Shown in pieces: positions 976 to 59,372 of a DNA stretch of 64,000 nt. Positions within the stretch are counted from its first letter, which is position 1. Each line of letters opens with the position of its first letter. The notes under the pieces are model-generated. The model worked only from the letters and a program-made list of their open reading frames with translations, ran no database searches and was not told the origin of the DNA. The translations under genes were made by a program, and so were the position numbers. This DNA comes from Euprymna scolopes (Eukaryota): the NCBI GenBank assembly GCA_053919585.1, contig CM132787.1; one strand, written 5' to 3'.

Positions 976-1253
976 ATGTATATAAGGATAAATTGTAAGA
1001 CCATATAAATTTATTTGTGTCGTAATATGTGTTGTACTACTCCCTATTCTTAAGATAATATTAACTGAAATCCGCACTTGTATTTTTTTCAGAAACTGAA
1101 AATTTAAGCTAAATTTAATGTAACTGTTTAAAAACCTCTACCTCATTTGATTTGCCTTTTATACTTCTATCATTTTACCTGTTCATATCCGAATTTTAAT
1201 TGAAATATTCTAGTTTTCACGTCAATTTAAAACTATAACTTCAAATATATATT

Positions 1254-1311
<58 letters not shown>

Positions 1312-1583
1312 TATAATTCAAATATTTATCAGGTTATATATTCTGAGATATTATTACTATTTTCCCAACTAAATATCAATCTGGAACACATTTATTTTAT
1401 CGCGTTTTTAAGAATTTACATTACATGTTGCATTCGAATAAACGCTTAAGGAATGTGTACTAGTTAAAGTTTAAGGTTAGCGACAATATAATTATAAAAT
1501 TCTGACCTTACATTTTGAGAACGATGTGTTATTATGCCACCCTCGTCAATTGGGCACTGGTGGTCGTTGAAAGAGAGGGAAGT

Positions 1584-1788
1584 NNNNNNNNNNNNNNNNN
1601 NNNNNNNNNNNNNNNNNNNNNNNNNNNNNNNNNNNNNNNNNNNNNNNNNNNNNNNNNNNNNNNNNNNNNNNNNNNNNNNNNNNNNNNNNNNNNNNNNNNN
1701 NNNNNNNNNNNNNNNNNNNNNNNNNNNNNNNNNNNNNNNNNNNNNNNNNNNNNNNNNNNNNNNNNNNNNNNNNNNNNNNNNNNNNNNN
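1584..1788. other. assembly gap (N run)
   Basis: Run of N. Confidence 1.
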
Positions 1789-5400: not shown

Positions 5401-7112
5401 CGATGGTTACCACAATCAGAAGTTGTTTCTTTAGTTTTGGAGAATCATTTGCCATTTATTTAATCTTGTGGAACTGGGGAATCCAGCTAAGTGCTAATTT
5501 ACTTTAATAATCACAGTTCAGTTTGAGAAACACATCGTTTTCCATAAGTTTAATAGTGATTATAATTGACCATTAGGAGGAAAAATTAAAGAAACTGTGA
5601 TTTATACTCGCACTACATCGGAGAAACAATAATCTGTATAGTGTAACTCGAGCATTAGTGAGCACAAAACTTCTATTAACAATAAATTAGAATTTCCCCC
5701 TCCCCCAATAAAGTGAATGAATCACACCCGCCAAAACACGGTTAATTTCTTTACAGAAATCTTATATAGGTCCCCAGTGCAAATCTTACCATCGATCACC
5801 TTATCGCGATTTCTGTCTCACTAGCATTGGTTGATCTTTGTTTTGTAAAGTTCCTTTTAAAGTTAAAATTCGACTTGTACATACAAACGTAGCGTTCTAA
5901 TGCTCTGTATAGGATCGCCTGTTTTCGATTAATTAAATTATATGATAAATAAATCTAAGAAAAAACATAAAAATCCAAATACTTTCAGTTAAGAAAGTAA
6001 CCCATACTATAGCGATTTCCCAATTATGATTTATGTCATGACAAATCGTATTAGTGGAAGCAAGTAAACGTATATAAGACTACAAGGTTAAACAAATATC
6101 AAAAGGAAATACACTTTTTTCCTTCTGAAAACAATATTCGATCTATAAATTTTAGAGTAAATTAAATTATAAAATTATCCATTTGTTACGATTAAACATA
6201 GTTACATATTATTATACGATAAGTGAGTAAACCGATACGTGTTTTACGATAGATTATGATATCTGACATACATTACATATGATCTGAACTAGTTATTTAA
6301 AATATACTTCAATAGTTAAGTCTTCTAGTCCATAATGTTAAGTTAACTTAACTACTTATCTCTCTCCCAAATTCTGAATATTTTTTATAAATTTCTATGA
6401 CATTATGTTTACCCGATCTGTCTTCATCGTAGCTTTTAATTATATTATGTATGTATTCCGTTCTTGCTTCAACAAGTGACACAAATAAAATAGTAAATGA
6501 TGATTTGATTTGAACAGTGGATCATCAACAAACCCTAGCAACAACAGTAGTAATAAAATTAACTCGTTCCTGGAAGGGGAATAGAAAAGGTGAAGACGAA
6601 AGAGAAAGTGAAGGCGGAGTTTAGCTTCAATGAAACGAGTTAGGGATATTTTTAATATTTAATTATTAACGTTCATAAGAAACTCCTCTTTTCATGATTC
6701 ATGAAATATAACTTCAATCAATTTATTAGCTAAACGTTATAATTTTCACCAGTCGAAATATATGATCGTCATGCAAGTATTATGATCGACCAACATGTAA
6801 TTCTGATTGAAAATTTTATTATGCGATACAAAATTTCAAGTCTGGATAAAAATTACAGTATACACGCTGAATAAACATATTACATGATTTTTACAAATAA
6901 TGAAATTGCATTAATTCATTTTAGCACAAAACTAAAACATATGGATTGCTCTACTAGTATGCGAAAGATATACCTATCGGTATATTCATATCATTGTGAA
7001 GCGTTCATATATTGTGTTTTGATTAGCCCCTACAACAAATATTGGATCTATTTGTTTATTTTAATCCGAGTAAAAAACTGTAAACTGCTCGAAATTTCTA
7101 CTATCATAGGAA

Positions 7113-8391
7113 CTAGCGAGGGGTACTCGGCGTTGCCCGTGTGTTTGTAGGGGTGTGTGATGTAAAATAGAAAAGAAACCGGGGGGTAGGATCGAAGCCG
7201 AACCACTGAGGCGAAGTTTGAAAATACAATCGGCCAGCCAGAAGTGAAAAGTGTTTGAAAGTCTTTGAGCGTTACGACGACGACGATGACGATGTAAGCA
7301 TTGTTATAAGCGAAGTAAGAAAAGAAAACAACGTTTTAATTAAGCGGGGGGGGGGTAAAACAACAAAAACGTAAGGCAAACGAACGATTAAAATAGATAA
7401 AACGAACGAACGTTACGTGATAAATTGCTTAAATAATACAGGGTTCAATATTTAAATTTTAAAATATCGAAAAAAAACCTCACACCACGATTCGAACCCA
7501 AAACGTTTAGATAATGAACCAACGCCTTAACTACCTGCACTAAAGCGGCGTATATTAAGCCTGTTCGGTTTATCAACTATTTAAAGTAAATCAGGTCACG
7601 ACGTCATGACGTCATCTGACGCATGCGTTGTTGACCCTCCCCCCTGTCGATTTCGGGGTGAAAAAGTTAACGTTTTTCTCGTTTTCTGTCTAGACATCTC
7701 CCTCTCTCTCTCTGTTTGCGTCTCTCTCACTCACTCTCTCTCTCTCTCACTTCGTCTTCCTTACTCTAAAGACTGGAAAATGGCGTCTGGCTGTTTTTAT
7801 TTTTCAAAACTTCGTTAATATTTTTTGTAAGCGTATTTTTTTTTTTACTTCACATGTTTGTCTTGTTATTTTTCGTTTAACTATCGTATCTACCTATTTT
7901 GAATGTGGTAATAACTTTGGTAACGTTTCCATAGCGTAGAAGTTCATATTTTAGCTTTAATTAATTTTTTTTTACCGATAACAACATTTTTTAATTGTAA
8001 ATTCAGACCGCCATTAGAGCTTGCTGACGTCAAGATCACATGACTCAGCGGGTTTTAAATACAAGTTGACCCAAAATAAACGGCCGCGTGTATAGTTTAT
8101 GTAGAAGAGTTGGCGGCCGTATTTTGGGGGGCAGTTATTAATCGATTTAAAAATATGTAATGTTTAACATTAAAATGTCACTTTTTGCCCCCCCCTCTGC
8201 AGAAAATCGATCAGTTGACACACTTCTGATGGTCACTTTGGGCCAATATTTCGATATTTGTCGTCCGGAAGGTAAGGCTTTTACATGAGATCAATTTATG
8301 AATTTTTGTCGTGTGTGTCGAAAGTTTTTAGCAGACACACACACATACACACAAACAAACACACATACATTTTCGCTTTTATATATATAGA
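7113..8391 (-). mobile_element. non-autonomous Helitron (~1.28 kb)
   Basis: On the minus strand it starts 5'-TCTATATATATAAAAG and ends with the GC hairpin CGGGCAACGCCGAG followed by CTAG-3'. Inserted between A and T with no TSD. CA-rich microsatellite near the 5' end. Confidence 0.8.
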
Positions 8392-9939
8392 TGTCACTTT
8401 GCAGGTGTGAGTTTCTTCCACATAGGTTCCGAAACAGCTAAGCGTATCGTGTGAGAATTTTACTCACAGTAGTTTATATTTCATGCAGTGTCCTTAGATA
8501 TGTTTTGTACAAACTTTCATCCGATAACTATCGAAAATAAAAAAAAGCAATCTTAAAAATAGTCTTTCTTCCCTCATAGGAAAATACGAGGGGATATTTT
8601 ACGTTACACCGGTGTAATACTTGCCACTGTAACGTAAATGTTCCCCTGTATTGTTTTTTATATCTATAACAGGAGAAAGCCTGTTTTTAAAATCGCCAAG
8701 CCTAAATATCAACTGACATGATATTGTAAACAAACACAGACTGAATTCGATGAATGACAATTTTATTATTTTGTTTTCTTTATTTTGCAAATTATTTCTG
8801 GTATTATATGTTTATTCAATGGAGGATTTATTATATCATAATACATTCGAAATGTAACATACTAAAATATCATGTTTAAGCATATTGTATTATCAGGCAA
8901 TGCCGGGCGTCCAAATAGATATATACTTGAGATTGTGTTTAAGTATTTTTTTTGTTTTTTTCTTTTTTTACTTTTTATGCGTTAAGAAACCTTGTCGGTG
9001 TATGTGCCAAACACTCTTGTTTTGACTGTGTCGGTGTCTCTAACAAACTCCTCTCTAAATGTTGGGCTACATTGTGAAAACCTTATAAATAGGATATTTG
9101 GAAATCTTACACATTTCCGATTTGAGTTTTAGCCAGAAAACTTTGATGCTAAGAGGTCAAAAGTTTACGATAATCGCATTAATCATTGCTTCTGCTGTTA
9201 CTCTTGTGCAAACGAATCTTTAAACTCGCATAGCTCATTTTCGCTTATTTTTAACCTTTCGTATCCATCTAACGGTAGCTCACACGTTAAAGACGCGCGA
9301 GAGAGGAATAACAATCCAATCTGGAACGCTTAACCTACTTGTTCTTATACTAGCGTATAGTAGCAACACATATTTTGATAACTATTGCAATCATTAGTAT
9401 ATATTGGATAATAATCCGTTGAAAATTGCCTCTATAATGATGAATTATAAATCCGTATTTTACGATTGGGCAATGACTCGTGCCCTACTTGTAGTAGATG
9501 AATGTTTAAGCTTATGAGATTATAATAATTCTGTTTAATGGTAGAAAATAGAGTTAACATGTATCGAAATTGAATGAAGCGGAACACATATTTGCAAATT
9601 TGATAAATACTAAAAATGCAAGTGAAACAAAGAATATAACCATTTATTCTTTCCTTCACTTCAGGGAATAAAAAAACTTCAGAAAAAACGCGTATACTAT
9701 ACGATATTCATGTGAATTAACTTTACCGTTAGTGAATATAAAGTAATACTCACAGAAAAATCCTTATTGATATTTAAAAGGAAACATCGAAATGTATCTA
9801 GCGGGGCCCATGTATCTACGTTGCCCAGTGGAAGTATGACAGATCCAGCACTGTATCGTTAAAACAACCCCCTTGAATACAATTCAAACTACGATTGTTG
9901 CTGTTGGCCACTGCCGTCCCGGGCAAATAAAATTTGTTA

Positions 9940-10680
9940 TGTTTTGTGTGTCAAATAATTGACCCCGTTAATATTAAATGAGTTTTATTAACTTTGCAAA
10001 AACATGAAGTGTCCAACAAGAATGTAATCAATTACCATGCCCTAGCTGATGGGAAAATAGAGCGATTCTTCACAAACATTTCAGTATTTATCCATACGAT
10101 GAGCATAGAAGAAAAAGATTAGAGAAAACATCTAGAAAAGTCTTAATGTATTATCAAAATAGGCGTCATGACATGACAATTGAAACTCCATTTAGGTGTC
10201 CTATTATTATCGAAGTGACCATGAATATCCTCTGTTCAAAAAGTGACTTGAAAACAAAGCTTTGAGAACAGCACAAAATTGCAAAATATGACAAATTTAA
10301 AGTCGCATTGACTTTTAAAAATAAAGCTAAACAAACAAACATAGCAACTGGATATGTTATATCACTTAAGCAAAGTAAACGCAAACTAATAGAGTTTACC
10401 ACTCAACCCCACGAAATGTAAAAGAATACACATGCATCTCTGCAAGTATAACACAACGTGATACCTAATTTTGCTGCACACTTCACAAATAAAAAATAAA
10501 ACTAAAGACAAGAGTCGCCAAATAACCAAGTGATGATAACTTGCTTTTAACCGACAAACTTGGGGTTATAAAACATGAGAGAAAATGAGACAACTGAGAA
10601 GGAAGAAGCAGATCTATCTATTGCCCTAAGACGACAACACACCAGATTAAATAAACGTTGAAGGTATGCAAACGTTCGTA
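9940..10680 (+). mobile_element. highly degenerate Gypsy integrase remnant
   Basis: NYHALADGKIERFF (cf. PYHPQANGxVERF), IHTMSIEEKD*RKHL and ATGYVISLKQSK (cf. GDxVLLKQ). Many stops. Confidence 0.5.
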
Positions 10681-18006: not shown

Positions 18007-18144
18007 NNNNNNNNNNNNNNNNNNNNNNNNNNNNNNNNNNNNNNNNNNNNNNNNNNNNNNNNNNNNNNNNNNNNNNNNNNNNNNNNNNNNNNNNNNNNNN
18101 NNNNNNNNNNNNNNNNNNNNNNNNNNNNNNNNNNNNNNNNNNNN
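18007..18144. other. assembly gap (N run)
   Basis: Run of N. Confidence 1.
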
Positions 18145-22337: not shown

Positions 22338-22465
22338 NNNNNNNNNNNNNNNNNNNNNNNNNNNNNNNNNNNNNNNNNNNNNNNNNNNNNNNNNNNNNNN
22401 NNNNNNNNNNNNNNNNNNNNNNNNNNNNNNNNNNNNNNNNNNNNNNNNNNNNNNNNNNNNNNNNN
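22338..22465. other. assembly gap (N run)
   Basis: Run of N. Confidence 1.
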
Positions 22466-31217: not shown

Positions 31218-33249
31218 TACATCCAATATGCTCTAAGACAATCATAGAAAAGAATATTTATTGAATTACACCAAATACGATTAAGCGAAATGATTAAATA
31301 CTTAAACCATATAATCTAGTATTTATATAAATTTATATTTATTTTGTAATTGTATAGCATTACTTGTAGTTTCTTCCTGTTGTTATATGGTTCACATTCC
31401 AAGAATATTTTTCCAAGATAAATAAGCTATTCATAATGCACAAACATATGATTTTGTTTGCACTTACGTCAGTCATTATATTTTAACAGTATACCGAGTA
31501 TGTTGAAAAAGAAGAATATCAGCTGTTGAGATTTTGCTCTAAATTGTAAAGTTTTTCTGTTCGCGTGTCAATGTTATTTTAAGAATGTGATCTGATTACA
31601 AAACCGATGATGAGTTCATTCTTACTTTTCAATATCTATTAATTACCATATTGGCTCCATGCTTTGGTTTTGTTAATTAAGCGGCTTGCGAAAATAACAC
31701 AGTCACATGAAATCAGATACATTTTACTAAGATACTAATAATATAGCAGGGATAAGATCAAGCACGAATAGTTTTGACATGTAAAGATTTTCTTCTTATA
31801 TCCTCTTTTCTTATTATGTCCGCATGAGAAAAACGAGTAGATGACAATATGTAGCTTCTCTCCTGAGTTGAAATTTTTGGATTGTGCTGGTATGTGGAAG
31901 TCACAATTGAGTTCAAGCCAAATCGCTGCGCAAACAAGTCAACTTTATCTGTTGTCATGTAAACAACATGGTCGTTGTTGAAATGTGGGCGCAATGTTTT
32001 TTCCTCATTTTTGGCAACACTGTTACATATTTGTATTACATTCTTCCTAATTATTGCGTTGTATTTTAATTCTTGCTATAATCATTTAGTTACGACTATT
32101 ACACGCTTACAATAGTGGCATAATTATATGAAAGTACTATGATAGATTACATTTGGCTTCGTCATCGGTCGGAAAGATTCCTGCTAATGTTCAATACCTT
32201 CCGCTTCGAATGACCGATTGGGATGGGTTGGAATTTTCGCGTGTGGGCATATGTTTTTATACCGTCCTAAACCATTTTTTAGGCATTCTTAAGCTATCGA
32301 ACAAACGTATTATTTCATAGAATATCCATGATTCGATCTGATATGTATTCCGATGAACTTGTTGATGATGTTTCGTCCTTTTGAGTAAGGGCGTTTCAGG
32401 ATTCTAGTCGGTTATATCAACACTTACTTTCGATGGTGGACTATTGATATCTGTATTACAAGCTCCTGACTGTGTAATCTTGAAAATATGTATAGTTAGA
32501 CCATTGGAAGGCAAGTAAAGGATGTGCTTCATGTGAAAAAGAGAATACTTTTTAATCCATCGTGTATGTGTAGTTTATAAAATGTTGCTCAGCAGAACAC
32601 GCTTAGACACACATTAGTATGCATATAGGCGAGCAGGGTAAATGTCTGGATCAGGGGAAGACTGTAGAGGGAATAAACGTAACTACATCACAGGCATGTC
32701 GTTTTTTTAGTTAAAGACAATGTTCTATGATGTAAAAGATGTATAAATCCAGCCAATCCAATGTTTGTTTAAGATTTTACGTCAAGGTAAGTGCTATCGC
32801 TTAATGAAAACCTGGATTTGTCATCTTATTTGATCATTAAAAGTCAGTAATTATTTTGTGTAGAAAATTACTGCTATTGTAGATCAAAATTTTATCCATT
32901 TTATAAATAAATGTTTTTCAACAAAGTCATTTTTTTACTCTATCGAAGCAAGATAATATAGCAACACGTTTGTATTTGACTTTTAAAAGTTAAGAGTGTG
33001 GATAATTGGTTAGATAAATTTTGGAATAGTAAAGTGACCAAAAACTTTGGAATATATAATACAACCGAAACCGTAATAAAATAACAATATCTACCGCCCT
33101 ACCTATAGACAAATGTTGATATCTTTAAATCATATTTTTCATATTATTTTTAATATGTCAACCCATTTAAAAAATCGTTTGTTTTCTCATTTATATGTGA
33201 CCTGAAAACTATTGATTAAAACACGAACCAAAACTTTTACCATATTTTT

Positions 33250-34305
33250 ATTATAATGGGCTAGTTAATTAAATTGCTGCTCACATCAGCAATATTTGGC
33301 AGAAGCCCTGAAAAGTTGGGATCTAAAGCAGGCTTCCCTAAAGAAGGTGCACTCTTGCAATTGCACAAATTGCCTGAGTAAACCTCTCGGCATTCCCCGG
33401 CCGGGGCGCTTCAGCCGACCAGCAATAAACTTGCCCCACCCGAAAGCCGGGTAGCAAGGCCTGGGAGGGTGGACATGCTGGGTATTACCCAGGCGATGTA
33501 CCTCAGTTCGACAGGTGCTGGACCGTTTCCCTGCCCCTCAACTGCCGGACTAAGTGTCAAGAACGGATCCTTGACGTGTACTACTACCTTGTCTTCCTGC
33601 AGTCGAAGCCGTTCGGAGACGCCTCCCATCATAAACATTATAATGGGATAGATATTTATTTGCTGTCCAGCGCAGCAAAATGTGCCACAAAACCGGAAGG
33701 TGGAGAAGAGGCAAGGTTCCCTAAAGAAGGTGCACTCTTGCCCAACAAAAATTGCCTGGACACGTCGGCATTCCCCCGTAGTTGTGCCTCAGGCGACACG
33801 CAATAAACTTGCCCCATGGGAAAGCCTGGTGGGAAGGCCTTTGAGGGTGGGACTCTAAGGTGATACTCAAGCGGTGTACCTCAGCCCGACAGGTGCTGGG
33901 CCGGTTTCCGGCCCCTCACCTTTCGGATTGAGTGTCAAGAACGGATCCTTGCCGAGTACTTCTACCCTGTCTTCTTGCAGCCGAAGCCGCTAGGAGACAC
34001 ATCCCATCATAAAAAGATTATAATGGGGTTATTTAAATTGCTCCTCAAATCAGCAATATTTGGCACAAGGCCGCACTCCTGCAACTGCAAAGGAGCACTC
34101 CTGCAACTGCAAATATTGCCAGAGTAACCCAATCGGCGTTCCCCTATAGGGGTGCCTCAGCAATAAACGTGGCCTACCGGAAAGTCCGGTGGCAATTATT
34201 ACCCAAGCGGTTTACTTAAGTCCGACACGTGCTTGGTCGGTTCTCGGCCCCTCACCTGTTGGGCTGTCCGGCCCCTCACCTGTCGGGCTGAGTGCCAAGA
34301 AATTG
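33250..34305 (-). repeat. head-to-tail trimer of a ~370-nt GC-rich structured non-coding element
   Basis: Monomers ~33261-33636, 33648-34016 and 34028-34305 (third is rearranged and truncated). Each is a reverse-complement homologue of 57558-57926. ATTATAATGGG at 33250-33260, 33637-33647 and 34017-34027. Confidence 0.9.
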
Positions 34306-35666
34306 ACGAATCTAATTAATTCCTGTTCTGCTACCAACCTATCAGAAACCAGAATTGCTCTATAAATGTTAAACCTTTCTGTATCAATTCCGCATATGCT
34401 TTTTTTTTCTTCGTGTCAACACGGACCGATTCTTTTGCTCTGTATTCCAACTCCAGAAATGTGTACTGCAAAACAATCACCTCCCAGGACTTGTACAGAA
34501 CACGAACGACCGGGAACTGTTCTGAAATTAAACATGGCTTACCATTCTAGAATCATATGTTCAGTTTTTCAATTCGCCATCGCAATTCAATAACGAAACA
34601 GTATATGCTAAAGGGTCATTCGGATTGAACTCCCTATTATCATATGATCATGATATATTAAAGCAAGCGAATAGCTACAAAAAAATTGAATTTACTGTAT
34701 ATAAGTATGAATTATCATTTAAACTTAAATAAGGAAACCGGCATTGTACATTAGCGCCTATAAACCGCATCAATTAATTTCAAACGAACCTTTCAAAAGG
34801 TAGTTTTACTAATTCATCATCATAATTACAGGCTAAAGAGTATGGTCAATCATATGCATATATTCCTAGTTCAATAATACAAAAACTCATAACACACGCG
34901 TTTCTTATATACTATAACAAACATATGCATATTACTCCCTTCAACAAAATCCCATTACAAAATCGACACTATTTATTACATTGCTATTACTGCGAAAAGT
35001 CAAATACGGTAGATTTCTAACTGATGACATTCAATAATTTATACGTCTGATAATTTAATATATTTGTATTGTTGAATAAGCTCTATGTGAATTTAACTCC
35101 TCTCATAATATTTAACATAACTCAACAGCTAATTGAGATATAACATTCTATTTCTTTTGCACTTTGGATTGGATAGTTTCTAAATCATTAGTGAATACAT
35201 TTTTATTATTAAATCATTTCATGTATTTACCAGGACGCTTAAAATGGGGTGAAAATATCACAAAAGTAACCATATAGCATTAAAATAGCATTAAAATATT
35301 ATATCTCGGTTATAAATAAAAAGTACTGAATAAAAGTGATTACTTTCTAAGTATTATTAGCATCATTTGACCTCCTCGTCCTGTTTCAATATAAAAAGAA
35401 TACACCTTGAAGCAATGAACTTTCTAAGCACATTCGATAAGGGATTATATGAACTTTAGAAAAATTACAATAAGTATACGTTCGTTGTGAGTCTGGCTTC
35501 GAACATAGAAATATAATACGTTATTCACATAAATATGGCGTATGTTATTAAGTCCGTTTGGATCGAACCCCGAAAAAATCATTAAGGCAGAAAATAACTT
35601 ATATATGTGTCTGTATTATTTTTACTTTTCGTCATGTTTTCTTATTTTTGTTCATTTTACTTACAT

Positions 35667-45129: not shown

Positions 45130-45262
45130 NNNNNNNNNNNNNNNNNNNNNNNNNNNNNNNNNNNNNNNNNNNNNNNNNNNNNNNNNNNNNNNNNNNNNNN
45201 NNNNNNNNNNNNNNNNNNNNNNNNNNNNNNNNNNNNNNNNNNNNNNNNNNNNNNNNNNNNNN
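45130..45262. other. assembly gap (N run)
   Basis: Run of N. Confidence 1.
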
Positions 45263-50299: not shown

Positions 50300-51340
50300 C
50301 GCCTGATAAACGCCTTGCTTAAATGTAGGTATGAACAGAGCATTTTTTAGAATACAGTTACAGATTTCGCCTTTATTATTGTTTAGGTATATTTTAGCAT
50401 CGCCTCTTTTCAAGACTATATCATTTATTTGACTACCGTCGGTAAGTTCGACAAAATGACTTTGAGGATTAAAGTTTGAATCAAAATTAATAACATCAGA
50501 TTCCTTGGTGATAACGTGCGCTGTACCACCACACTATACAAGGAGATTTTTACCGTTTGTGGTATTGCCAAAGTTAGATGTGAATAGAAATGTATGTTCT
50601 TCCTCAAAGTTCTCAACATTTTTTACGGAGTCCGTTTTAGAGCGTTTATATAGACATTTGATTTTTTTGTGGTTGGATCGTCAACAATTATAGCAGATAC
50701 TTTTATTCTTTTCTTGGGAAAATTACTTTTAGAGAATACGTTACGGTGATGTGCGTAATTTGGTGGTGGCTGTTTTCAAGAAGCATTTTTGAACTTCATA
50801 ATATTGCTGGTGTTATTATTTTCCACGAGCATACGATTAGTCTCTTCGTAACTGCGCGATGCCACTTTAAATTCGCTGAAATTTATGGGTTTGTTTTTCT
50901 GAGTTTTAACAGTTGTCAATAGTTTTAAATAAACTGGAAGTCCCTTGAGGGTCTTTGATATCAACAAGCTATCGCTTATTATTTAACCTGAGAGTTTTAA
51001 GGCATTGGCGGTTGTTTCTGCCCTTATAACGTATGCGGTAATCGTTTCATCCTCGTTACGTTTCAAAGACGTTAATTCTGCATATAGGGATATTATTTTC
51101 GGTTTCCCTTTTGATAAATAATTTTCTCGTAATATGTTCAATGCTTTCCTGCCATCATCCAATGCGTCCCTTATAATACGAGACAGACTTCTATCGTCTA
51201 AACATTGAATCAGTTCTGCAAAAATAGTCGCGTTATTTTTTGAAGAAGTTCGGGGTCGTTTGGATTCTCTGTTGTAGATTGTATGGCTTTGTGTAGTTTT
51301 GGAATTCTTAGATATCCCAGAACTTTTACTTGCCACAACC
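50300..51340 (-). mobile_element. degenerate Copia gag-protease
   Basis: IFAELIQCLDDRSLSRIIRDALDDGRKALNILRENYLSKGKPKIISLYAELTSLK (gag), TLKGLP...FSEFKVASRSYEE, CYNC*RSNHKKIKC zinc knuckle, and LLV*CGGTAHVI...HFVELTDGS...LKNALFIP (protease). Confidence 0.85.
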
Positions 51341-51367
51341 TCTTAAGTTCTGAGATAGTGTGTTGAA

Positions 51368-51441
51368 CAAAGATGGCGGCGTAGTTCAGATCAGTAACCA
51401 AGATGGCGGCGTAGTTCAGATCAGTAACCAAGATGGCGGCC
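51368..51441 (+). promoter_or_regulatory. 30-bp tandem repeat carrying three YY1-type motifs
   Basis: AAGATGGCGGC at 51370, 51400 and 51430 (unit CAAGATGGCGGCGTAGTTCAGATCAGTAAC). Confidence 0.6.
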
Positions 51442-51774
51442 AAGAATTAAATGCGGTCCGTGACGCAGTAAACGGCGAACTGATTGAATCCAAAATTCGA
51501 CAATTTTTATAATAATTTTAGGACGTTTTCATTGGTTGTTTAGCACAGCCGTTGGTTATAAATTTTTTTTGCGAATCCATTCGTTGCATACCCCCATCAC
51601 TGCGTCTTTTGATTCTGTGTTGTATACAAAAAGCGATTTCTCTCCTTTCTGTCATTTTTCTGTTATTTTCATTAACGTCGGATTTTTTTTCCACACGACG
51701 CCTTTTTTCCCTGCTTTTTACTGTTATTTTTAACAGTTTTGGGGCTTTTTTAACCGTTTTTAAACGGTCCGGCT

Positions 51775-53536
51775 ATGGCTGCTTCTGCGAGCCAGACGCC
51801 CATTATCATAGATACGATGGAGTCGGAAAATGCTACACCTTCTATGCCTAACATCTGGTCTAAAACCCCAAAGATGGACATCAACGTCAAAGACTTCGTC
51901 GAAAAGGCAAAACAATGCCTGGAGCTCGTCACCGATACAGGTTTAATCGTAAACCTACCAAAGTTGGAGGAAATCCGAAAAAAAGTGTATTGCACTATTT
52001 GTAGTTGACCGTAGAAAACAAATTAAAAGGTGATAAGAGAAAGTGCTGACATCGTTATTAACCTTTTGACCTCAGCAGGGGTATGACCCTTACGCATTGT
52101 AAAATGTAAGGGTTATAACACATGGAGTGTGCTTCTTAATTCACCGGAAGAATGCATAACTATTTCACAGAAAGAAATCATTACATCACAATATATTTTA
52201 AGGACTAAATACATGGGGAAACGTCAAACTACGGTTTCCGTTTTTAATGTTCCGCATCACATCCAAGGAGAGCATCTTGGCGCCTTCTTCCAAAAATTCG
52301 GCGAGATGGTAACAGTACAAGTTGAGGAGTTCCATGGTATATGGCCCTTCGACATCCTCCTTGATAAGGAAAATTTGTAAAAATCCCTTACTTCCTGAAG
52401 GTAGGAGAGGAAAAACTGCCCATAATAGTTGCTGGCAGAAGACCGACTTGTTGGAACTGCAGCAAGATTTGACACCTTACATTTGAGTGCCCCTTAAAGA
52501 AACCTTCACCAAACCCCAAAAGTCTCACAGGACAACACTTGGGAAGCACAACTTCTACAAGCTTACCCAAGCCTCTCACCGAAGAAACGACCAAAAACGC
52601 AGACGAAATACTCAGAGGAGAACCCTGGTAGATCGCTCCTGGAAAGAAAACCCCTGGACGCCTGAGCCTCGACCAGATGAAAGAGCAAGTCATTCTCCAA
52701 AACGATCCGGGTAAGGAAAAGTATATAGCGATCATTAATTTAAAAAAGAAACTGGACACTCAACCGCAACTACCCAAATACCAACGTAAACCCCCTTCTC
52801 CGAAAACAAGTCCCAGTCTTATAACCGCCCCTATCACTCAGTCTCCTACAAAGCCCAAAACTCCCCCTCTTTCAGAATGCCTCTTCCAGTCACAACTCCC
52901 GGTCCCTCACAAACAGCCCAAACTAACACCCCTAAGCCCTTTAAAAAAACACAAACCTTCCGCTCCTATTCCATCTACCTCTGCGACCGACATCACCGAA
53001 AAAAAACCCTTCTAACGCACATAGTGCAATGGACATTACTCCCTCACTCGAACACAAGAAAAAGGCCCTCTACCTCCCTGGCACAGACATCTGCATACTA
53101 AATCAAACAGCAATAAACAATCATAAAAACTTCAAAGGGACAGATCTCACAAAGCTAATAGAGTTCAGGGAGGTAGGGGGAAACTAATAGACACCCCTAC
53201 TAACTTTCCAAACGGTAAAAGAATACTAAGAATCATCTGTAAAAAAGAAGAGGCAAAAGAACTTTTGCAAAGGCTGGAAGAGGCCAACAAATCTTTCAAT
53301 CCCCCCCCAATTGTTATATTTAAAGACCAAGATATAAAAAGCCTTAAGAAATGTTGTGTTGGGAGGGTCCCGATAAACACCCCTCCCTGTATAGGATAAC
53401 AAAACTAACCTATCCTCTGCATGTCGGCGGTATCCCTCGTGAGGGACTCATCGATACTGTGATGGGTACCTATTCCCTCACGAGAGCTGTCGGCATGTTC
53501 ACGACCGCGATGTTCGTTTCTGGTTCTCAACCTTAA
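51775..53536 (+). pseudogene. Tx1 ORF1 (nucleic-acid binding protein), disrupted
   Basis: RTKYMGKRQTTVSVFNVP...LGAFFQKFGEM (RRM-like), VAGRRPTCWNCSKI*HLTFEC (CX2CX4HX4C), and a Pro/Lys/Thr-rich linker. Multiple stops and frameshifts. Confidence 0.8.
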
Positions 53537-53545
53537 GGGACACTC

Positions 53546-56500
53546 ATGGATCTAAAGCTTACTAGTGTTAATATCCGAGGACTAAGTGCCGACTCGCGAA
53601 AATGGCGGTTGAGTTTGGACCTGCAGCACATCGGAGTGGATATTTGCTGTGTGCAGGACACCCATTTTATTCCCGGTGACCATTTACGTGCGCTCTAAGA
53701 CATTTAAGGATAATTCAGCGTACTTTAATTCTCACTCTAGAGTGGTCTCCTGGCTAGTTAAAAGGTCCCTAAATGCATCGTGTGACCCGTGCTACATGGA
53801 TCCGGAGGAAGACTATGCGTTTTTGATGTTACCATAAAGGGCAGGGCATTTCGTCTTATTGGGGTTTATGCGCGCAATAGCCAGGTTAAGCTGTTTTTTC
53901 GGCGCATTGAGCAGTTCATGGATACTTCTCGAACCGTTATCTTAGCGGGAGACTGGAACGCGGTCCTGGATCCCGATTTAGATCGATTTGATCGACAAAT
54001 ACCGAAATGAAAAGCCCCGTAACTTAGTGTGGACTAAGACAGGTAGACGCGACTCCGGTCCGGTACAGCTCTCGAACTATATCGACCGGTTCTTAGTTAG
54101 GAGAGTCGATGTAGGAGTATTGAATGTTCAAGTTTCCACAACATAGTTTACTCGGATGACAGACTTGTCCGTGTACGGGTAAACTTAGATAGATCTAAGC
54201 TTAGATTAGCCGGTTACTGGAAACTCAACATGTGAAGGGCTTCCGGGAAGGGCTATTACTAACCATACAGCGGGAATTGCCGGGGGTAATTATTGGGAAT
54301 AAGTGGAGGGTAAAAATTAAGGAAGCCATTAGGTCCTTTTCTGCCAACTTTAGTAAAAGACTCAATCTAGATTCTAGGGCAGCTAAAGCGACACTAGATT
54401 CTAGATTAGTCGGGCGGTGGAGGAGAGGGATAGTGCTAGCGTTAATGTAATTAAGGCTCAGCTACCCTCCCTTGCTGAAAAGGTGCACAACGTTTTAGCG
54501 ATTAGGGCTAGGTTAAAAAGAATGCCCCAGGAAGCAACAAACATGGCCGTTGAACTGCATGCAGAGGAGCTGAGGCAATCGGCCGATAGTCACATCGCTC
54601 GTGTCACATTGCCGGACGGGCGTACCGTGACCACAAACCAGGGTGTACTGGAGGCGTTTAGATCTCATTTCCAGGAGCTTTTTTTCCATGGAACCCGGTC
54701 TGTCATTAGAACAGTTCGACACTTATTTGGCTGATTTTTCTAGTCTTACGACGACCGAAGCGGCTAGGTGCGAAAATGGCATAACAGAGGAGATAGTCAT
54801 TGAAGCCTTAAACCGGGTCGGCCTTAATAGGTCTCCGGTGATCGATGGTCTGCCCTACGAAGTGTATTTGAGGTTGTTGCACATCTTTGTCCCTTTGCTG
54901 ACGGTTTTATTTAACTCATGCTTTAGGAACGGCTCAATCCGCAAGTACTTTACCATGGGTGTGATAATTCTTGTCCGTAAAAGCAAAGTTGGTGGGAATG
55001 GGTTAGGTAATTTCAGGCCTTTAACGATGCTTAACGCGGAGTTAAAGATTTTGGCCAAGATTCTCGCAAATCGTCTGCAGCTTGTTCTGGCTCGTCTTAT
55101 TAGCCCCGAGCAAACGTGTGCCGTGAAGGGCAGGACAATTCAGGAGAACTTGCACACGATAAGCCTGATGATAGAAAAAGTCGACACTGAGGCCACGCTG
55201 ATCAATTTAGATCAGTCCAAAGCCTCTGATAGGGTTGACCATCGGTATTTGGGGGTTGTTTCATCGGCGGCCGGTTTTGGCCCGCAATTTCGTTCGTGGG
55301 TTCATCTTCTCTATGCTAACCCCGCGGTGATGGTAGAAGTAAATTGGAGGAGGTCGAGACCCTTCAGTTTGTCACGTTCAATTTGTCAAGGGTATCCGTT
55401 ATCACCCATGCTGTACGTGCTCGCAATAGAGCCATTTTGCTCAAGCTAAGGGTGAATCCGGTCCTACGCGGAATCACTTTGCCAGGTGCGGATCCCCAGG
55501 TAAAGTACTCCTCCTATGCAGACGACGTAACTGTGCTTGTAACAAGCAGTGCTGAGATTAGTGTCGTCAGTGTAGAAATCAGATTGTATGAAACGGTAAC
55601 AGGGGCCAAAATTAGCTGCGACAAGTCTTCGGGTGTGAGCATCGGTCGGTGCCTGGAGAGGTATGCCCCTTCAGGGGCCCTTTAGTTGGAGCGACGGGCC
55701 GTGCAAGATACTCGGAGAAAAATTGGTCGGAGGTTCTGAAAGCTGTCCGATCCGCAGCTGTGCGGTGGATCAGTAGACGCCTTTCATTAAAGGGGAGAAC
55801 GGAGGTGTGTAATACCCACATTTATCTAATCTTCATTTATCGTCTATCAGTGCTTCCAATCCCGTCAGATACACTGCTATATTTGCAGAGGGCTCTTTTC
55901 AACTTTTTATGGCTTGAAGGAGCCCCCATGTTCTGTCGCGATGTCTGGTACCTACATCCTTCTGAAGGCGGTCTAGATATGCCAAATGCTGAGATTCGGC
56001 TCCGCACACTATGCTCTACTACCTAGATCGAATGTGCACACAGGATAGAGAAGACCGTTCCCTCTGGATGGAGGGCACCAAGAAATTCTTTCCGGCTTTG
56101 AGAGGGGTTCACGAGTCTGAGGGGGAGGCACACGGGTTGCCCCGAGGTGAATGCCCCTTCTACCGCGAGTGCTGGCGCGCGTTGAAGTTCCTCTTAAGAG
56201 TTAAGGAAAGCTTCTCCAACGCTCTGCTGTTTTCCCGAAAGGCATTATATCGGGTACTAGTGAGGGGATCCGTAAGGGATGTTATTGATTAGGGGCTCCC
56301 TTTGACGAAGAGACAGCTCCGCTCAATCTGGCCTTGGGCGCCTGGGTCGGGATGCCTCACTAATGATGAGGAATCTTTGACCTGGCTGGTAATTCGGGAT
56401 GCTCTCTGGGTCGGTAAGAGACTTCTCTCAGCTGGCTTGGCGGTTTCGCCTATTTGTAAGCGGTGCGGTGATGAGGTCGAGACTTTATGTCACGCCTTCG

Positions 56501-56888
56501 TCTATTGTCGCATCGTGGTGCCGCTGATTGCGTGTGTTACAGGTCCCATGGTCCGCCCGCATACTGAACACATCGTCGTTAACTTTGGTTCCTCTCAATG
56601 TATGTAGCAATTAGGCTCCGACAACAGATAGGATTAGAAAATAATTTTGTTTGACCTTGCTAGCAGTAATGAGAGGTGTTATTTGGAACACACGTATGTG
56701 TGGTCTACGGATCTGAGGACTTCGCTCCCCTCGACCTTATACGAATCTTCCGTTATCATTTGAAGAGTCGTATCAAGGCCAAGAGAGTTAGACTCTCTTC
56801 GTCAGACTTTGTTGAAAGGTGGGTGTCAGTTGTGCGTGTGTGTCGGGTGAGAGAAGCAAGTCTTGACTGGTTCTTTGACGCCCCTTAG
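53546..56888 (+). pseudogene. Tx1 ORF2 (APE endonuclease, reverse transcriptase, C-terminal zinc finger), disrupted
   Basis: MDLKLTSVNIRGL, IGVYA, LAGDWN, YIDRF, SPVIDGLPYEVY, NFRPLTMLNAELKILAKILANRL, LDQSKASDRVDH, QGYPLSP, YADD, and CKRCGDEVETLCHAFVYC. Confidence 0.92.
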
Positions 56889-57083
56889 GTAAACGAATTT
56901 TTGGTAACAAAAACGAACGTCAGCCCTGACTCGTTTAAAGTCCAGAGTAGGTAACGGTTTAGGCAAGATTAGGACAATTTTCTAGACTCTTATGTTCATA
57001 AACTAACTAGTGTGTGATAGAGACCTTTAGTCCCTTTTTAAGTTTGTCCCGTTTTTTTTAGCCCCATTCCCCTTCCCCAATTT

Positions 57084-57239
57084 AGGTGACAGATCGCTTG
57101 ATTCGCCAGAGATGCGGGTTCCCTTTGGAGGTTTTCGTAAGAGGTGATAAAATAAAGCGTTCGGGCCCGCATCACCTTTTCGACTGGCGAATCAGCGCAC
57201 CTGCCACAGTTTAGCAACAGAGGGGTCTTTTGTTGCTAA
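57084..57239 (+). other. long stem-loop plus a second hairpin in the Tx1 3' UTR
   Basis: Nested pairs AGGTG/CACCT, TGATTCGCCAG/CTGGCGAATCA and GATGCGGG/CCCGCATC, then TTAGCAACA/TGTTGCTAA. Confidence 0.8.
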
Positions 57240-57557
57240 CATTGTATATATTCCATTTTATCTTGTATCATAAAATTTTTATAACCCAAGCCCCCATTTT
57301 TCTTATAAGTTTTAATTAGTTTATCATGGTATGATGTTCTATGGTGAATGACGAAGGATGTATACGCTGATGGATGTATAGTATGAATGTGGTATTGTGG
57401 TGAAAATAGAGTGAATGCAGGAACTAGTTAGGTTAGATTAGTTAGTTTTGGACAGAGAAGACCGCCCTTCCCCCTCCCCCATGTTCGGCCTTGTGCCAAA
57501 TTTTTCTTAAAATATTTTTTAATGTATTGTACGGAAATAAATATTTACCCCCACATC

Positions 57558-57926
57558 TGGGTCTGATGAGGAAGGTCTCCTAGCGACTTCGGCTGCATGG
57601 AGACAGGGTATTACAAGTCAAGGATTCGTCACTTGACACTCAACCCAACAGGTGAGGGACCGGGAACCGGCCCAGCCCCTGTTGGACTTAAGTACGCCGC
57701 CTGGGTAATACCTAGGAGGTCCACCCTCCCAGGCCTTGCCCCCGGGCTTTCCGGTGGGGCAAGTTTATTGCGTGCTGCCTGAGGCGCCCCAACCGGGGAA
57801 TGCCGACGGGGTTACTCAGGCAATTTTTAAAATTGCAGGAGTGTCCCTCCTTTAGGGGAGCCTGCTGGGTTCCCACTTTCCGGCCTTGTGCCACATAATG
57901 CTGATGTGGGCAGCATTTAAATATAT
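57558..57926 (+). mobile_element. ~370-nt structured non-coding SINE-like unit directly behind Tx1
   Basis: Homologous to the three monomers at 33261-34305. Contains multiple hairpins and ends GGCCTTGTGCCA + AATGCTG-7nt-CAGCATT + AT tail, followed by CCCCCATCAC (57928-57937), identical to 51591-51600. Confidence 0.8.
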
Positions 57927-59372
57927 CCCCCCATCACAACTCAAACACATTCTACAGTCTACATTCACTCTTTGTATAACGGCATCGAGACCCTCCCGGT
58001 TTATATGATGCGTATCTTCATTTTATTAACTAGCTTGCATTCTCCACGTTGGCAGAGAGTAAAGCAGAGAAATGAGTAGAATATTTTTTACTGCATACTT
58101 AATTCGTTTATAAAAAATGCGCCATTGAAAACATAATATGATCTATTAATAACTTGGCAATGGAATGTATAGAAACCATTCTAGTTGAAATAGAAGCAAA
58201 ATTAATTTACATTTTAATTTATCACGCTAATATATTGAATATAATAGGAATAATATAATGGTAAGTGTTCCCAAGTAAGGAAATAGAGTTTCCGCGATAT
58301 ACAGCTACTTCGCACAAAATCAGGTCGAAGAAGAATCATTCCCGTGATTACTGAACACTAGTTCAGAAATGCAAATCGCTAATAACTATCGTGAAGTTTT
58401 TACTCTAATTATTCAGCATGCTAGGAATGCTTGTAAACCGCAAACGCCTTATTGTAACTTCAGGTCGAGGAGGATTACTAATCCCTTTATCTAATCCTAA
58501 TCACTTCCAAACTCTTGTAGGATGTCTGGAGAAACACCAATTATATTTTTTCTCAACGTTACTTCCGACAAGATTTTAATCACCAGTAGCATGCAAAATA
58601 ATCTGAAATGACGAATTCGCGGAGAAGATCACAAAGACGTAAGGAATATAATCGGCAAGCGTTAGTTAATACCGATAAAGAAGACAAAGAAAATAATGCT
58701 AAAACTATTAAGAACATTTAATCTAAATCACTGATGAAAATTTTAAAGTATTTTTCATAAAAGCAAACAGGGAGTGTTCATCGAATTTTATATCATTTTA
58801 AGTTCAGCAAAATAATGTAAATGATCTTTAATTTAAAAATAAAACAGGGATGAAAGAATATAAAAAAAATAATATTACAATCTATTTTTCTTAAATGAAA
58901 GAACAAATTATTTTAAAATTGTAAAAAAGAAAACGAACGAGGTACTGCACACGTTATATGAATGCTGCTGTAGTCGCATCGCCAACATGTTGCATCGGAC
59001 GAAAACCGTAAAATATACTGCGTTTTTAGGCATAGATCACTGAAAAATCGAGATGCAGTAAATTATTATTATTTTCAATTAAGACATCACAATAAACCAG
59101 AAAAAAATATTACTTCAGTCACTACTTAATATTCAATGGCTGCTCCCTGTTTCGTATAGTAATAATTAGTGAGAACTTTAGTTTAATGTCCAGACTCATA
59201 TAATGTATGATCAATATATATTCGCTATCTGATAAAACTAGCTAAATATATATATAGTCATGTCATGTAAGGCATATTGCTTCTGAGGCATTAATCACCA
59301 ATTTTTTATTTCAAATACCGATTATGTTTTTTGTTTAAAATTAAACTTTTGTTTAAAATTAAACTTCATTAG

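What the first reader, a model, noticed from the sequence alone, without database searches (positions are those of the whole stretch)
57558..57926. Highly structured ~370-nt non-coding unit sharing its 3' end with a Tx1 LINE: candidate non-tRNA SINE-like partner
Seen in sequence: four copies in this window (here, and three at 33.3-34.3 kb), three sharing the same 5' boundary. The unit is a chain of hairpins: GTCTCC/GGAGAC enclosing a C-UUCG-G loop, GTCAAG/CTTGAC, CCAACAGG/CCTGTTGG enclosing a GGGNCCGG/CCGGCCC hairpin, CTGGGT/ACCYAG, CTTGCCCC/GGGGCAAG and TGCCTGAG/CTCAGGCA. The last hairpin covaries between copies at non-CpG positions: AATGCTG/CAGCATT, ATTGCTG/CAGCAAT, TTTGCTG/CAGCAAA, each with a 7-nt loop. 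Just before it lies GGCCTTGTGCCA, also present at the Tx1 3' end (57487-57498). I see no tRNA A/B boxes and no conserved ORF. Established: SINEs borrow a LINE's RT through a shared 3' stem-loop. Inference: a non-autonomous retroposon or structured RNA mobilised by this Tx1 family, whose fixed 5' end could come from RNA processing. I do not recognise it as a named family.
Basis: partly seen in the sequence, partly recalled or inferred. Interest (0 to 1): 0.8.

Follow-up and report, generated by a model that had tools for sequence, protein, structure and literature searches.

The report
Site-specific SINE-like partner of a LINE
The ~370-base structured unit is a short, non-coding jumping element that borrows the machinery of the neighbouring LINE; both home to one short sequence inside the end repeats (LTRs) of copia-type retrotransposons and pile up head to tail there. 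It is a new variant of a kind already described in crocodilians.

Summary
The unit (window 57557-57927, + strand) is real. It has roughly 7,000-10,000 copies in this 5.9-Gb genome, which is probably a decapod cephalopod. It is not part of the LINE: 17 of the 30 LINE 3' ends examined stop at the equivalent of 57547 and run directly into host sequence with no unit.

The unit and the LINE share four things:
- the same insertion site, ATA|CCCCCATTA;
- target-site duplications of 9-16 bp;
- a 5'-terminal CTGCGTCT(T)GAT;
- a 3' module made of GGCCTTGTGCCA, a hairpin and a TAAATAWNTA tail.

The site lies 17-35 nt inside the 5' edge of the LTRs of two related copia-like families. The LINE and the unit are antisense to those elements. 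About 1,000 empty sites exist. Each insertion regenerates the site, so units and LINEs stack in either order. Short arrays mix subfamilies, which points to serial insertion. Long uniform 383-bp arrays also exist and are unexplained.

Several stems covary, most strongly the 3' hairpin, where 4 of 7 pairs show compensatory changes. No tRNA, snRNA or ribozyme family matches.

The self-cleavage idea is not. The closest known case is SINEU with Tx1-Mar (Kojima 2015). First-reader notes elsewhere in this genome describe what may be the same family (not checked here).

The parts
51337..51590 (-). Bulk of a copia-like LTR (host type B). Its own sense is the minus strand. It contains AAGATGGCGGC subrepeats, ATTGG boxes and a TATA-like box, and ends with ...CATTCGTTGCATA.
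   Evidence: blastn to an empty type-B host, 94.6% over 261 bp. Orientation comes from the pol ORF plus polypurine tract in L038 and L054.
51591..51599 (+). Target copy 1 (CCCCCATCA), immediately 5' of the LINE.
   Evidence: Read directly. The same motif flanks units and LINEs genome-wide.
51600..57547 (+). Degenerate full-length LINE. It begins CTGCGTCTTTTGATTCTG and ends ...GAAATAAATATTTA. Weak APE match at 53789-54010, RT at 54643-55685, zf-RVT at 56302-56607.
   Evidence: Pfam RVT_1 at 3e-16 and zf-RVT at 4.5e-9. Exo_endo_phos at 0.007, below cut-off. 30 genomic copies share the 3' end.
57487..57547 (+). LINE 3' module: GGCCTTGTGCCA, then an AU-rich hairpin, then AATAAA and TAAATATTTA.
   Evidence: Alignment of 30 LINE tails: motif exact in 24 of 30 and within one mismatch in 29 of 30; AATAAA present in 28 of 30.
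57548..57556 (+). Target copy 2 (CCCCCACAT, decayed) between the LINE and the unit.
57557..57927 (+). The unit: a 371-nt, 57% G+C, non-coding SINE-like retroposon. 5' end CTGGGTCT (consensus CTGCGTCT). UUCG-capped hairpin at 57575-57604. T5 run at 57825-57829.
57882..57927 (+). Unit 3' module: GGCCTTGTGCCA (57882-57893), covarying hairpin AATGCTG/CAGCATT (57897-57917, 7-nt loop) and tail TAAATATATC (57918-57927).
57928..57936 (+). Target copy 3 (CCCCCATCA), identical to copy 1. This is the target-site duplication enclosing the LINE plus the unit.
57937..57956 (-). The first ~20 nt of the same LTR (its 5' edge, ...TTCTACA in + strand reading). This is the short 'right arm' of host type B.
34297..34552 (+). 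Remainder of a copia-like LTR of host type A. The units here lie on the minus strand, so the LTR's own sense is the + strand.
   Evidence: blastn to an empty type-A host, 74.8% over 262 bp.
33262..34296 (-). Three old units in tandem: 34030-34296 (5'-truncated), 33649-34015 and 33262-33635. They are separated by copies of CCCATTATAAT(C/G) and followed by the decayed LTR edge at about 33235-33261.
   Evidence: The three copies are only 77-81% identical to each other and carry three different compensated versions of the 3' hairpin.

Best explanation
The unit is a non-autonomous, non-coding retroposon. It works like a SINE but has no Pol III-type head. The site-specific LINE family next to it copies it into DNA.

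Shown:
- The LINE and the unit insert at one and the same sequence, 5'-...TCATA|CCCCCATTA(C/G)AAGTC-3'. This lies 17-35 nt inside the 5' edge of the LTRs of two related copia-like retrotransposon families. Both elements are antisense to those retrotransposons.
- The 3' junction is invariant and the 5' junction varies.
- A 9-16 bp target-site duplication carries locus-specific variants on both sides.
- The two elements share a 5' end, CTGCGTCT(T)GAT, and a 3' module of GGCCTTGTGCCA, a hairpin and TAAATAWNTA.
- Compensatory changes preserve the unit's 3' hairpin.

Inferred:
- The LINE's ORF2 protein recognises this 3' module on the unit RNA.
- It nicks the bottom strand to the left of CCCCC and primes reverse transcription there (target-primed reverse transcription).
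- The top strand is cut 9-16 nt downstream.
- Every insertion leaves an intact site on each side, so further units and LINEs land there. This builds head-to-tail stacks such as the LINE plus unit at 51.6-57.9 kb and the trimer at 33.3-34.3 kb.
- Transcription is probably by Pol II, from or through the host LTR, not by Pol III.
For: Independence from the LINE:
- 17 of 30 LINE tails have no unit after them.
- 0 of 29 other unit loci have the LINE tail next to them.

Same site:
- Every LINE 3' end and almost every unit is followed by CCCC(C)ATTA plus host arm A or B.
- In the window the LINE plus unit sit between two identical CCCCCATCA copies inside one LTR.

Empty sites: 998 type-B and 78 type-A junctions genome-wide, against 0 in the reversed controls.

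Target-site duplication: a locus's own flanks are more alike than shuffled pairs (0.542 vs 0.426 +/- 0.027; 0 of 2000 shuffles reach it). Locus-specific variants are duplicated, for example in L002, L028 and L030.

Shared termini.

Both orders occur. L067 reads LINE, unit, LINE.

Serial insertion:
- Within-array identity is 0.915, against 0.913 between loci.
- Array neighbours belong to different subfamilies.
- A unit's nearest relative is often about 99% identical and lies at another locus.

RNA structure under selection:
- 121 cells changed on both sides of a pair, against 54 +/- 5.5 in shuffles (0 of 500 reach it) and 26-42 in the slid controls.
- In the 3' hairpin, 4 of 7 pairs are compensatory.

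The LINE family is recently active. Dozens of 1157-aa open ORF2 frames exist, many spaced about 6.1 kb apart head to tail.

Host is a copia-like LTR:
- An RVT_2 ORF, a polypurine tract, then TGTTGCAA...CTTACA.
- A partner LTR 7.18 kb away followed by a zf-CCHC ORF.
- The type-B pol is 68% identical to type A.

Against Pol III:
- A T5 run in 65 of 69 units.
- No tRNA-like or other small-RNA head.

Precedent: SINEU with Tx1-Mar shares a transposon target and forms tandem copies sandwiching a TSD (PMC4494074).
Against: - No experiment shows mobilisation. The partner relation rests on shared site and shared termini.
- The shared sequence is short: about 12 nt at the 5' end, and a 12-mer plus a 10-nt tail at the 3' end. 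The hairpins between the 12-mer and the tail differ in sequence.
- No discrete unit RNA was seen. PolyA RNA-seq reads cover the unit on both strands, with no preferred starts or ends, and 64% of the laid reads run on into unlike sequence.
- Long uniform arrays do not fit serial independent insertion and need another process. Examples are 21 and about 34 units at exactly 383-384 bp, all of one subfamily.
- The 5' junction bases are the same within an array although the unit bodies differ. This needs an extra assumption: insertion into the upstream site copy, or joining guided by homology.
- The LINE's Tx1 clade placement is unverified.
Confidence: 0.8

Rival explanations
1. The unit is not mobile by itself. 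It is an internal tandem-repeat module or satellite of a composite element, and it is the LINE's target rather than its partner, like the PTR-1 repeats of Xenopus Tx1D.
For: Tandem arrays with a 381-383 bp period are common. Some are long and uniform. The hosts are themselves transposons.
Against: - Hosts without any unit are common: about 1,000.
- Single units are flanked by duplications of the locus's own site.
- The LINE never sits inside a unit, only at its boundaries, and often has no unit nearby.
- Two unrelated LTR arms, A and B, carry the same unit.
- Short arrays mix subfamilies whose nearest relatives lie at other loci.
Confidence: 0.06
2. The unit is just the LINE's 3' UTR, or sequence carried along by read-through (3' transduction).
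For: In the window the unit follows the LINE directly. 12-13 of 30 LINE tails are followed by a unit.
Against: - A copy of the target site separates the LINE and the unit.
- 17 of 30 LINE tails lack a unit.
- 0 of 29 other unit loci have the LINE tail next to them.
- The order unit then LINE also occurs.
- There are several times more unit copies than LINE tails: about 7,000-10,000 24-mer matches against about 1,070 first-look candidates.
Confidence: 0.02
3. It is a retrozyme-like element. A self-cleaving, possibly circular, structured RNA would be copied by rolling-circle reverse transcription into tandem arrays, and the fixed ends would be cleavage sites.
For: - A highly structured ~370-nt RNA.
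- Tandem arrays, including long uniform ones with an exact 383-bp period.
- Junction bases that are identical within an array.
- A CUGAUGA-like string at the 5' end of some copies.
Against: - No hammerhead, HDV-like, twister, pistol, hatchet or other ribozyme family at E<=1, either in single units or across array junctions.
- The consensus reads CUGAUGG, not CUGAUGA, and no GAAA follows the hairpin that would be helix II (read from the consensus).
- No complement to the 5'-terminal bases for an HDV-like P1.
- Short arrays are mosaics of subfamilies, which a single rolling-circle event cannot produce.
- The spacers carry locus-specific target variants.
Confidence: 0.05
4. It is a host non-coding RNA gene family whose structure is conserved for a cellular function. 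The copies would be pseudogenes made by the LINE.
For: Covarying stems. Unit sequence is present in RNA libraries of at least three species labels.
Against: - No Rfam family matches.
- Thousands of copies sit at one transposon site.
- Both termini are shared with the LINE.
- No locus stands out as a source gene outside the LTR site among the 84 loci read.
- RNA reads lie on both strands without defined ends.
Confidence: 0.03

Closest known systems
SINEU families mobilised by Tx1-Mar LINEs in crocodilians (Kojima 2015, Genome Biol Evol, PMC4494074)
   Same: A short non-autonomous retroposon and a LINE (there Tx1-clade) share a specific target inside another transposon. Tandem copies sandwich a TSD and are explained by sequential insertion. 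Heads are shared between some LINEs and SINEs. Transcription from the flanking target was proposed there. The same paper notes Tx1 families that prefer LTR retrotransposons.
   Different: SINEU heads derive from U1 or U2 snRNA, whereas this unit matches no snRNA, tRNA, 5S or 7SL. The target here is a copia-like LTR, not a Mariner element. The host is a mollusc. The body is a 57% G+C chain of hairpins with compensatory changes. Long uniform arrays exist here.
Xenopus Tx1L LINE inserted in the PTR-1 repeat of Tx1D, and other target-specific Tx1-clade LINEs such as Keno, Kibi, Koshi, Mutsu and Dewa (Kojima and Fujiwara 2004; as summarised in PMC4494074)
   Same: An APE-type LINE homes to one short sequence inside a repeated element and forms head-to-tail stacks.
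   Different: In Xenopus the ~400-bp repeats are the target. Here the ~370-bp unit is a co-inserting passenger and the target is in an LTR. Clade membership of this LINE was not tested.
Stringent LINE/SINE pairs recognised through a shared 3' stem-loop, e.g. eel UnaL2/UnaSINE1 (Kajikawa and Okada 2002; cited from my own knowledge and from PMC4494074)
   Same: A shared 3' module of conserved motif, hairpin and short terminal tail, with no poly(A) at the junction. Compensated stem changes fit recognition of shape rather than sequence.
   Different: Those SINEs have tRNA heads and insert without site specificity.
SIDEs, short internally deleted derivatives of R2 and R1 (Eickbush and Eickbush 2012; own knowledge)
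   Same: Site-specific non-autonomous elements that keep both termini of their LINE and live in the same target.
   Different: SIDE bodies are LINE sequence and keep the 5' ribozyme. Here only about 12 nt at the 5' end and the 3' module are shared, and the body shows no similarity to the LINE.

Membership tests
SINE in the classical sense | Short, non-coding, dispersed in high copy number, flanked by target-site duplications | tested here: met
   371 nt. No ORF of 100 aa or more. 6,997-10,425 matches to two 24-mers. TSDs.
SINE in the classical sense | Head derived from tRNA, 7SL or 5S RNA with an internal Pol III promoter | tested here: not met
   ARAGORN finds nothing. No Rfam family at E<=1. 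A T5 terminator-like run lies inside 65 of 69 copies.
SINE in the classical sense | 3' tail shared with a partner LINE | tested here: met
   GGCCTTGTGCCA plus hairpin plus TAAATAWNTA in both elements.
Target-specific SINE dependent on a Tx1-type LINE (SINEU-like) | Same specific target as a co-resident LINE family; tandem copies separated by the TSD | tested here: met
Target-specific SINE dependent on a Tx1-type LINE (SINEU-like) | snRNA-derived head | tested here: not met
   No U1 or U2 match within the unit. A U2-like hit in L028 lies outside the units.
Tx1 clade (the partner LINE) | RT phylogeny places it in the Tx1 clade | not testable with these tools
   Only the architecture was seen: a weak APE match, RVT_1 and zf-RVT. 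The best named relative is an unnamed cuttlefish protein. The structure model was too poor to use, pLDDT 45.
Tx1 clade (the partner LINE) | Target-specific insertion into a repeated sequence | tested here: met
   All 30 of 30 LINE tails are followed by the CCCC(C)ATTA site.
SIDE (internally deleted LINE) | Body made of LINE sequence | tested here: not met
   blastn of the unit against the LINE finds only the 16-nt 3' motif.
Retrozyme or other ribozyme-bearing tandem repeat | A self-cleaving ribozyme motif in each unit or across the unit junction | tested here: not met
   No ribozyme family in the unit or in four arrays. No HDV-like P1 complement. A new ribozyme class cannot be excluded by sequence alone.
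Retrozyme or other ribozyme-bearing tandem repeat | Circular RNA | not testable with these tools
   'Goes back' joints in the runs are equally explained by genomic tandem arrays.
Satellite DNA | Long uniform head-to-tail arrays | tested here: met
   This holds at some loci only: 21 and about 34 units at 383-384 bp, all of one subfamily. Most sampled loci are single units or short mixed arrays.
Ty1/copia-like LTR (the host of the target) | TG...CA-bounded repeat after pol and a polypurine tract, paired with a second copy a few kb away | tested here: met
   RVT_2 ORF, AAAAAATAGGGAGGA, then TGTTGCAA...GGCTTACA in L038. A partner LTR 7.18 kb away followed by a zf-CCHC ORF. The type-B pol is 68% identical.

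The most novel reading that the evidence does not exclude
The unit RNA may take an active part in its own homing or amplification.
- Its conserved 5' UGAUGGGG is the reverse complement of the target CCCCAUYA (7 or more of 8 pairs in 47 of 69 copies). It could pair with the target strand or with a co-transcribed site copy and so guide 5' joining.
- The long uniform 383-bp arrays could come from multimeric or rolling-circle reverse transcription of a processed, perhaps self-cleaving, RNA of a class not yet in Rfam.
Probability: 0.1. Interest if true: 0.8.

Novelty: new variant of a known kind. Interest (0 to 1): 0.5.

Why it matters
- It adds a second, clearer example, in a different phylum, of a site-specific LINE with a site-specific short passenger. 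The passenger has no small-RNA-derived head, which raises the question of how such an element is transcribed.
- The 3' hairpin covaries beside an invariant 12-mer shared with the LINE. That gives a ready-made, testable recognition signal for a stringent reverse transcriptase.
- The system shows how self-regenerating target sites turn a dispersed element into tandem arrays, one possible route from a SINE to satellite DNA.
- Decapod cephalopod genomes are reported to be almost free of annotated SINEs (PMC8967140). A family of about 10,000 copies that standard pipelines would not call a SINE matters for their repeat annotation.
- A LINE and SINE pair that parasitises LTR retrotransposons at one spot near the LTR edge is also a natural experiment in conflict between transposons.

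Tried and rejected
Ribozymes and known RNAs:
- Rfam at E<=1 on the unit and on four tandem arrays found nothing in the units.
- ARAGORN found nothing.
- A hand scan for an HDV-like P1 complement at the 5' end found nothing convincing.

RNAalifold on the 69-copy alignment gave a poor consensus that missed obvious hairpins.

My first idea was that the conserved flanks were promoters of multicopy genes, or LTRs in the same sense as the LINE. I gave this up once pol ORFs and polypurine tracts fixed the LTR orientation as opposite. The TATA-like box 31-33 nt upstream of the site, in the LINE's sense, remains a lead only.

Clade check of the LINE:
- The Atlas search returned only generic RT clusters.
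- The protein search returned unnamed cephalopod fragments.
- The AlphaFold model of the RT piece had pLDDT 45 and was not used for fold search.

RNA evidence: reads from a polyA library and contigs from three other runs cover the unit on both strands, with no preferred ends. This neither supports nor excludes a discrete unit RNA.

After no more genomic loci could be fetched. The long arrays and the 332-bp-period variant could therefore only be seen through pattern positions.

Full report
**What is at the coordinates**

Window 57557-57927 (+) is a 371-nt stretch of 57% G+C in a window that averages 34%. It folds into a chain of hairpins (-158.9 kcal/mol, z = -3.9 against dinucleotide shuffles). 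The reverse strand scores the same, as a hairpin chain should. Three more copies lie on the minus strand at 33262-34296. Two are full length and one is 5'-truncated. The unit has no ORF of 100 aa or more, no tRNA and no Rfam match at E<=1, whether taken alone or across tandem junctions.

**Abundance and arrangement**

The window's genome is 5.9 Gb in 925 contigs, 46 of them chromosome-sized. A search with the unit gave over 3,000 first-look candidates. Two 24-mers of the unit occur 6,997 and 10,425 times with up to 2 mismatches, and their reversed controls occur 0 times. Copies occur singly and in head-to-tail arrays with a period of about 381-383 bp.

**The unit is not part of the LINE**

- None of the 29 best other unit loci has the window's LINE tail beside it.
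- All 30 of the best LINE 3' ends stop at the equivalent of 57547 (...AAATAAATAT(T/C)TA).
- 17 of those 30 run straight into host sequence, and 12-13 are followed by a unit.

**A shared, specific insertion site**

The flanks of 'single' units turned out to be conserved. There are two kinds of left arm, A and B. Both end in ...TCATACCCCCATTA. The right arms are short: A is (C)AAGTCCAAAATATTGCAACA and B is (G)AAGTCAAAAACATTTTACA. After these the sequence becomes unique.

The arms joined without any insert are common: 998 B junctions and 78 A junctions with up to 3 mismatches, against 0 in controls.

Each unit is bracketed by a direct repeat of (ATA)CCCC(C)ATTA. In one subfamily the repeat extends to about 15 nt. 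Locus-specific variants appear on both sides, for example in L002, L028 and L030. A locus's own flanks are more alike than shuffled pairs (0.542 vs 0.426 +/- 0.027; 0 of 2000 shuffles reach it).

The 3' junction is invariant (...TAAATAWNTA|CCCCC). The 5' junction varies in TSD length and in the first few bases. This is the usual signature of target-primed reverse transcription.

All LINE 3' ends are followed by the same CCCC(C)ATTA plus arm A or B. In the window the layout is:
- LTR arm B, 51337-51590;
- CCCCCATCA, 51591-51599;
- LINE, 51600-57547;
- a decayed site copy, 57548-57556;
- the unit, 57557-57927;
- CCCCCATCA, 57928-57936;
- the 20-nt B edge, 57937-57956.

The trimer at 33.3-34.3 kb sits in an A-type host in the same way.

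**What the hosts are**

Arm A is the LTR of a Ty1/copia-like retrotransposon.
- In L038 an ORF with an RVT_2 domain (4.5e-36) is followed by AAAAAATAGGGAGGA. Directly after that comes TGTTGCAA...GGCTTACA, about 314 bp long.
- A second copy lies 7.18 kb away in the same orientation. An ORF with a zinc knuckle follows it.

The B type has the same layout. Its pol-like ORF is 68% identical to the A-type one.

This fixes the LTR sense as opposite to the LINE and unit sense. It places the site 17-35 nt inside the LTR's 5' edge.

Read in the LINE's sense, a TATA-like box lies 31-33 nt upstream of the site in both LTR families. I can confirm the spacing but not the sense: the insertions are antisense to the copia genes. 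Whether the LTR fires in that direction is untested.

**Termini shared with the LINE**

- 5' end. The LINE starts CTGCGTCT(TT)TGATTCTG (window and L067). Full-length units start CT(G/T)CGTCTGATGGGG.
- 3' end. Both carry GGCCTTGTGCCA. It is exact in 24 of 30 LINE tails and within one mismatch in 29 of 30, and almost invariant in the units. A hairpin follows, AU-rich in the LINE and AATGCTG/CAGCATT in the unit. Both then end in TAAATAWNTA.
- Nothing else in the unit resembles the LINE.

**RNA structure**

- 94.2% of cells are paired.
- 121 cells are changed on both sides of a pair, against 54 +/- 5.5 in shuffles (0 of 500 reach it) and 26-42 when the partners are slid.
- The 3' hairpin carries most of the signal: AU<->UA in 19 and 28 copies, UA<->CG in 9, CG<->GC in 3, with almost no broken pairs.
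- Other stems have one compensated pair each: GC->AU in 5 copies, CG->UA in 8, AU->GC in 7, GC->CG in 3.
- A possible pseudoknot between the loop's GUGGG and an upstream CCCAC has one compensated pair in 5 copies.

G-U cells outnumber A-C cells only mildly (202 vs 150), and there are seven consensus G-U pairs. This fits the + strand but is weak evidence, because the structure was derived from that strand.

**How arrays arise**

In short arrays the units are no more alike than units from different loci (0.915 vs 0.913). Neighbours belong to different hairpin subfamilies. A unit's nearest relative is often about 99% identical and lies at another locus. Units and LINEs interleave in both orders. 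The LINE itself forms arrays spaced about 6.1 kb apart, with many open 1157-aa frames. This is serial insertion into a site that each insertion regenerates.

Two things are left over.
- The few variable bases at the 5' junction are the same within an array. I attribute this to insertion into the upstream site copy, or to joining guided by homology. That is inference only.
- Some arrays are long and uniform: 21 and about 34 units at 383-384 bp with an identical 34-mer. These need local amplification or multimeric copying.

**Transcription**

- A T5 run inside 65 of 69 units argues against Pol III.
- AATAAA lies in the tail of 28 of 30 LINEs and 34 of 69 units.
- RNA libraries contain unit sequence.
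- Reads of a polyA library cover the unit on both strands, with no preferred ends, and most run on into other flanks.

Expression as a discrete RNA is therefore open. No ribozyme is evident.

The upstream site copy CCCCAUYA can pair with the unit's UGAUGGGG (7 or more of 8 pairs in 47 of 69 copies). Its meaning is unknown.

**Comparison with what is known**

Kojima (2015, PMC4494074) described SINEU elements and Tx1-Mar LINEs that share a target in a Mariner transposon. The paper reports tandem SINE copies sandwiching a TSD. It also mentions Tx1 families that prefer LTR retrotransposons.

The present system is of that kind. It differs in lacking any snRNA or tRNA head, in its structured and covarying body, in its LTR target, in its mollusc host and in its long arrays.

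L1-Tx1 LINEs are reported as expanded in coleoids, and SINEs as nearly absent from decapod annotations (PMC8967140).

I could not verify the LINE's clade. The best named relative of its RT is an unnamed protein of the cuttlefish Acanthosepion pharaonis at 66% identity.

First-reader notes elsewhere in this genome (s1-241407, s1-241415) describe what may be the same pair (not checked here). Two notes on this window (s1-295762, s1-295698) agree with the reading given here.

**Verdict**

The interpretation as a SINE-like partner is supported and sharpened to a site-specific LINE and passenger pair homing to copia-like LTRs. The self-cleavage idea has no support. This is a new variant of a known kind, of moderate interest.

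Noticed in passing
L028:401-525 (-), genome C30 near 79.855 Mb: A U2 snRNA match (57.5 bits, E = 2e-9) with large internal deletions lies about 1 kb upstream of a unit array. It may be one of the U2-headed SINE-like elements that other notes of this scan report in this genome.
   Followed up: no
genome C1:10175712-10180025, C1:20301240-20302900, C1:61273478-61277130: Arrays in which a 24-mer of the unit's 3' part recurs every 331-332 bp instead of 381-383 bp. This is presumably a shorter relative of the unit. It would help explain why 3' motif counts (10,425) exceed 5' motif counts (6,997).
   Followed up: no
genome C1:52937307-52944967 and C1:60986436-60999084: Long uniform arrays of 21 and about 34 units, spaced exactly 383-384 bp apart and all with an identical 34-mer of one hairpin subfamily. 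They look like satellite DNA and differ from the short mixed arrays.
   Followed up: partly
genome, e.g. C18:65710830-65729886, C41:37599705-37618806, C46:61910510-61923604: Head-to-tail arrays of the LINE itself, spaced about 6.1 kb apart, many with an uninterrupted 1157-aa frame. The LINE family looks recently active.
   Followed up: no
window 34297-34330 (-): The oldest unit of the trimer is joined to its host LTR at a shared GATTCGTCA. This looks like a deletion between two 9-bp repeats that removed the site copy and the unit's first ~70 nt. The same unit has an internal duplication of about 25 nt.
   Followed up: partly
L066:~1950-2022: A unit truncated to its last ~60 nt sits in the target site directly after a LINE. 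5'-truncated insertions of the unit therefore exist but were rare in the loci sampled.
   Followed up: no
L020:~998-1330 (-): A unit's 3' end is followed by a site copy and then the 5' end of a second, 85% similar LINE subfamily that begins differently (TTTTGTACTGCGCG...). More than one LINE lineage seems to use this site.
   Followed up: no
window 1584-1788, 18007-18144, 22338-22465, 45130-45262: Four runs of N, 604 bases in all. None is near the finding. They were left as they are.
   Followed up: no
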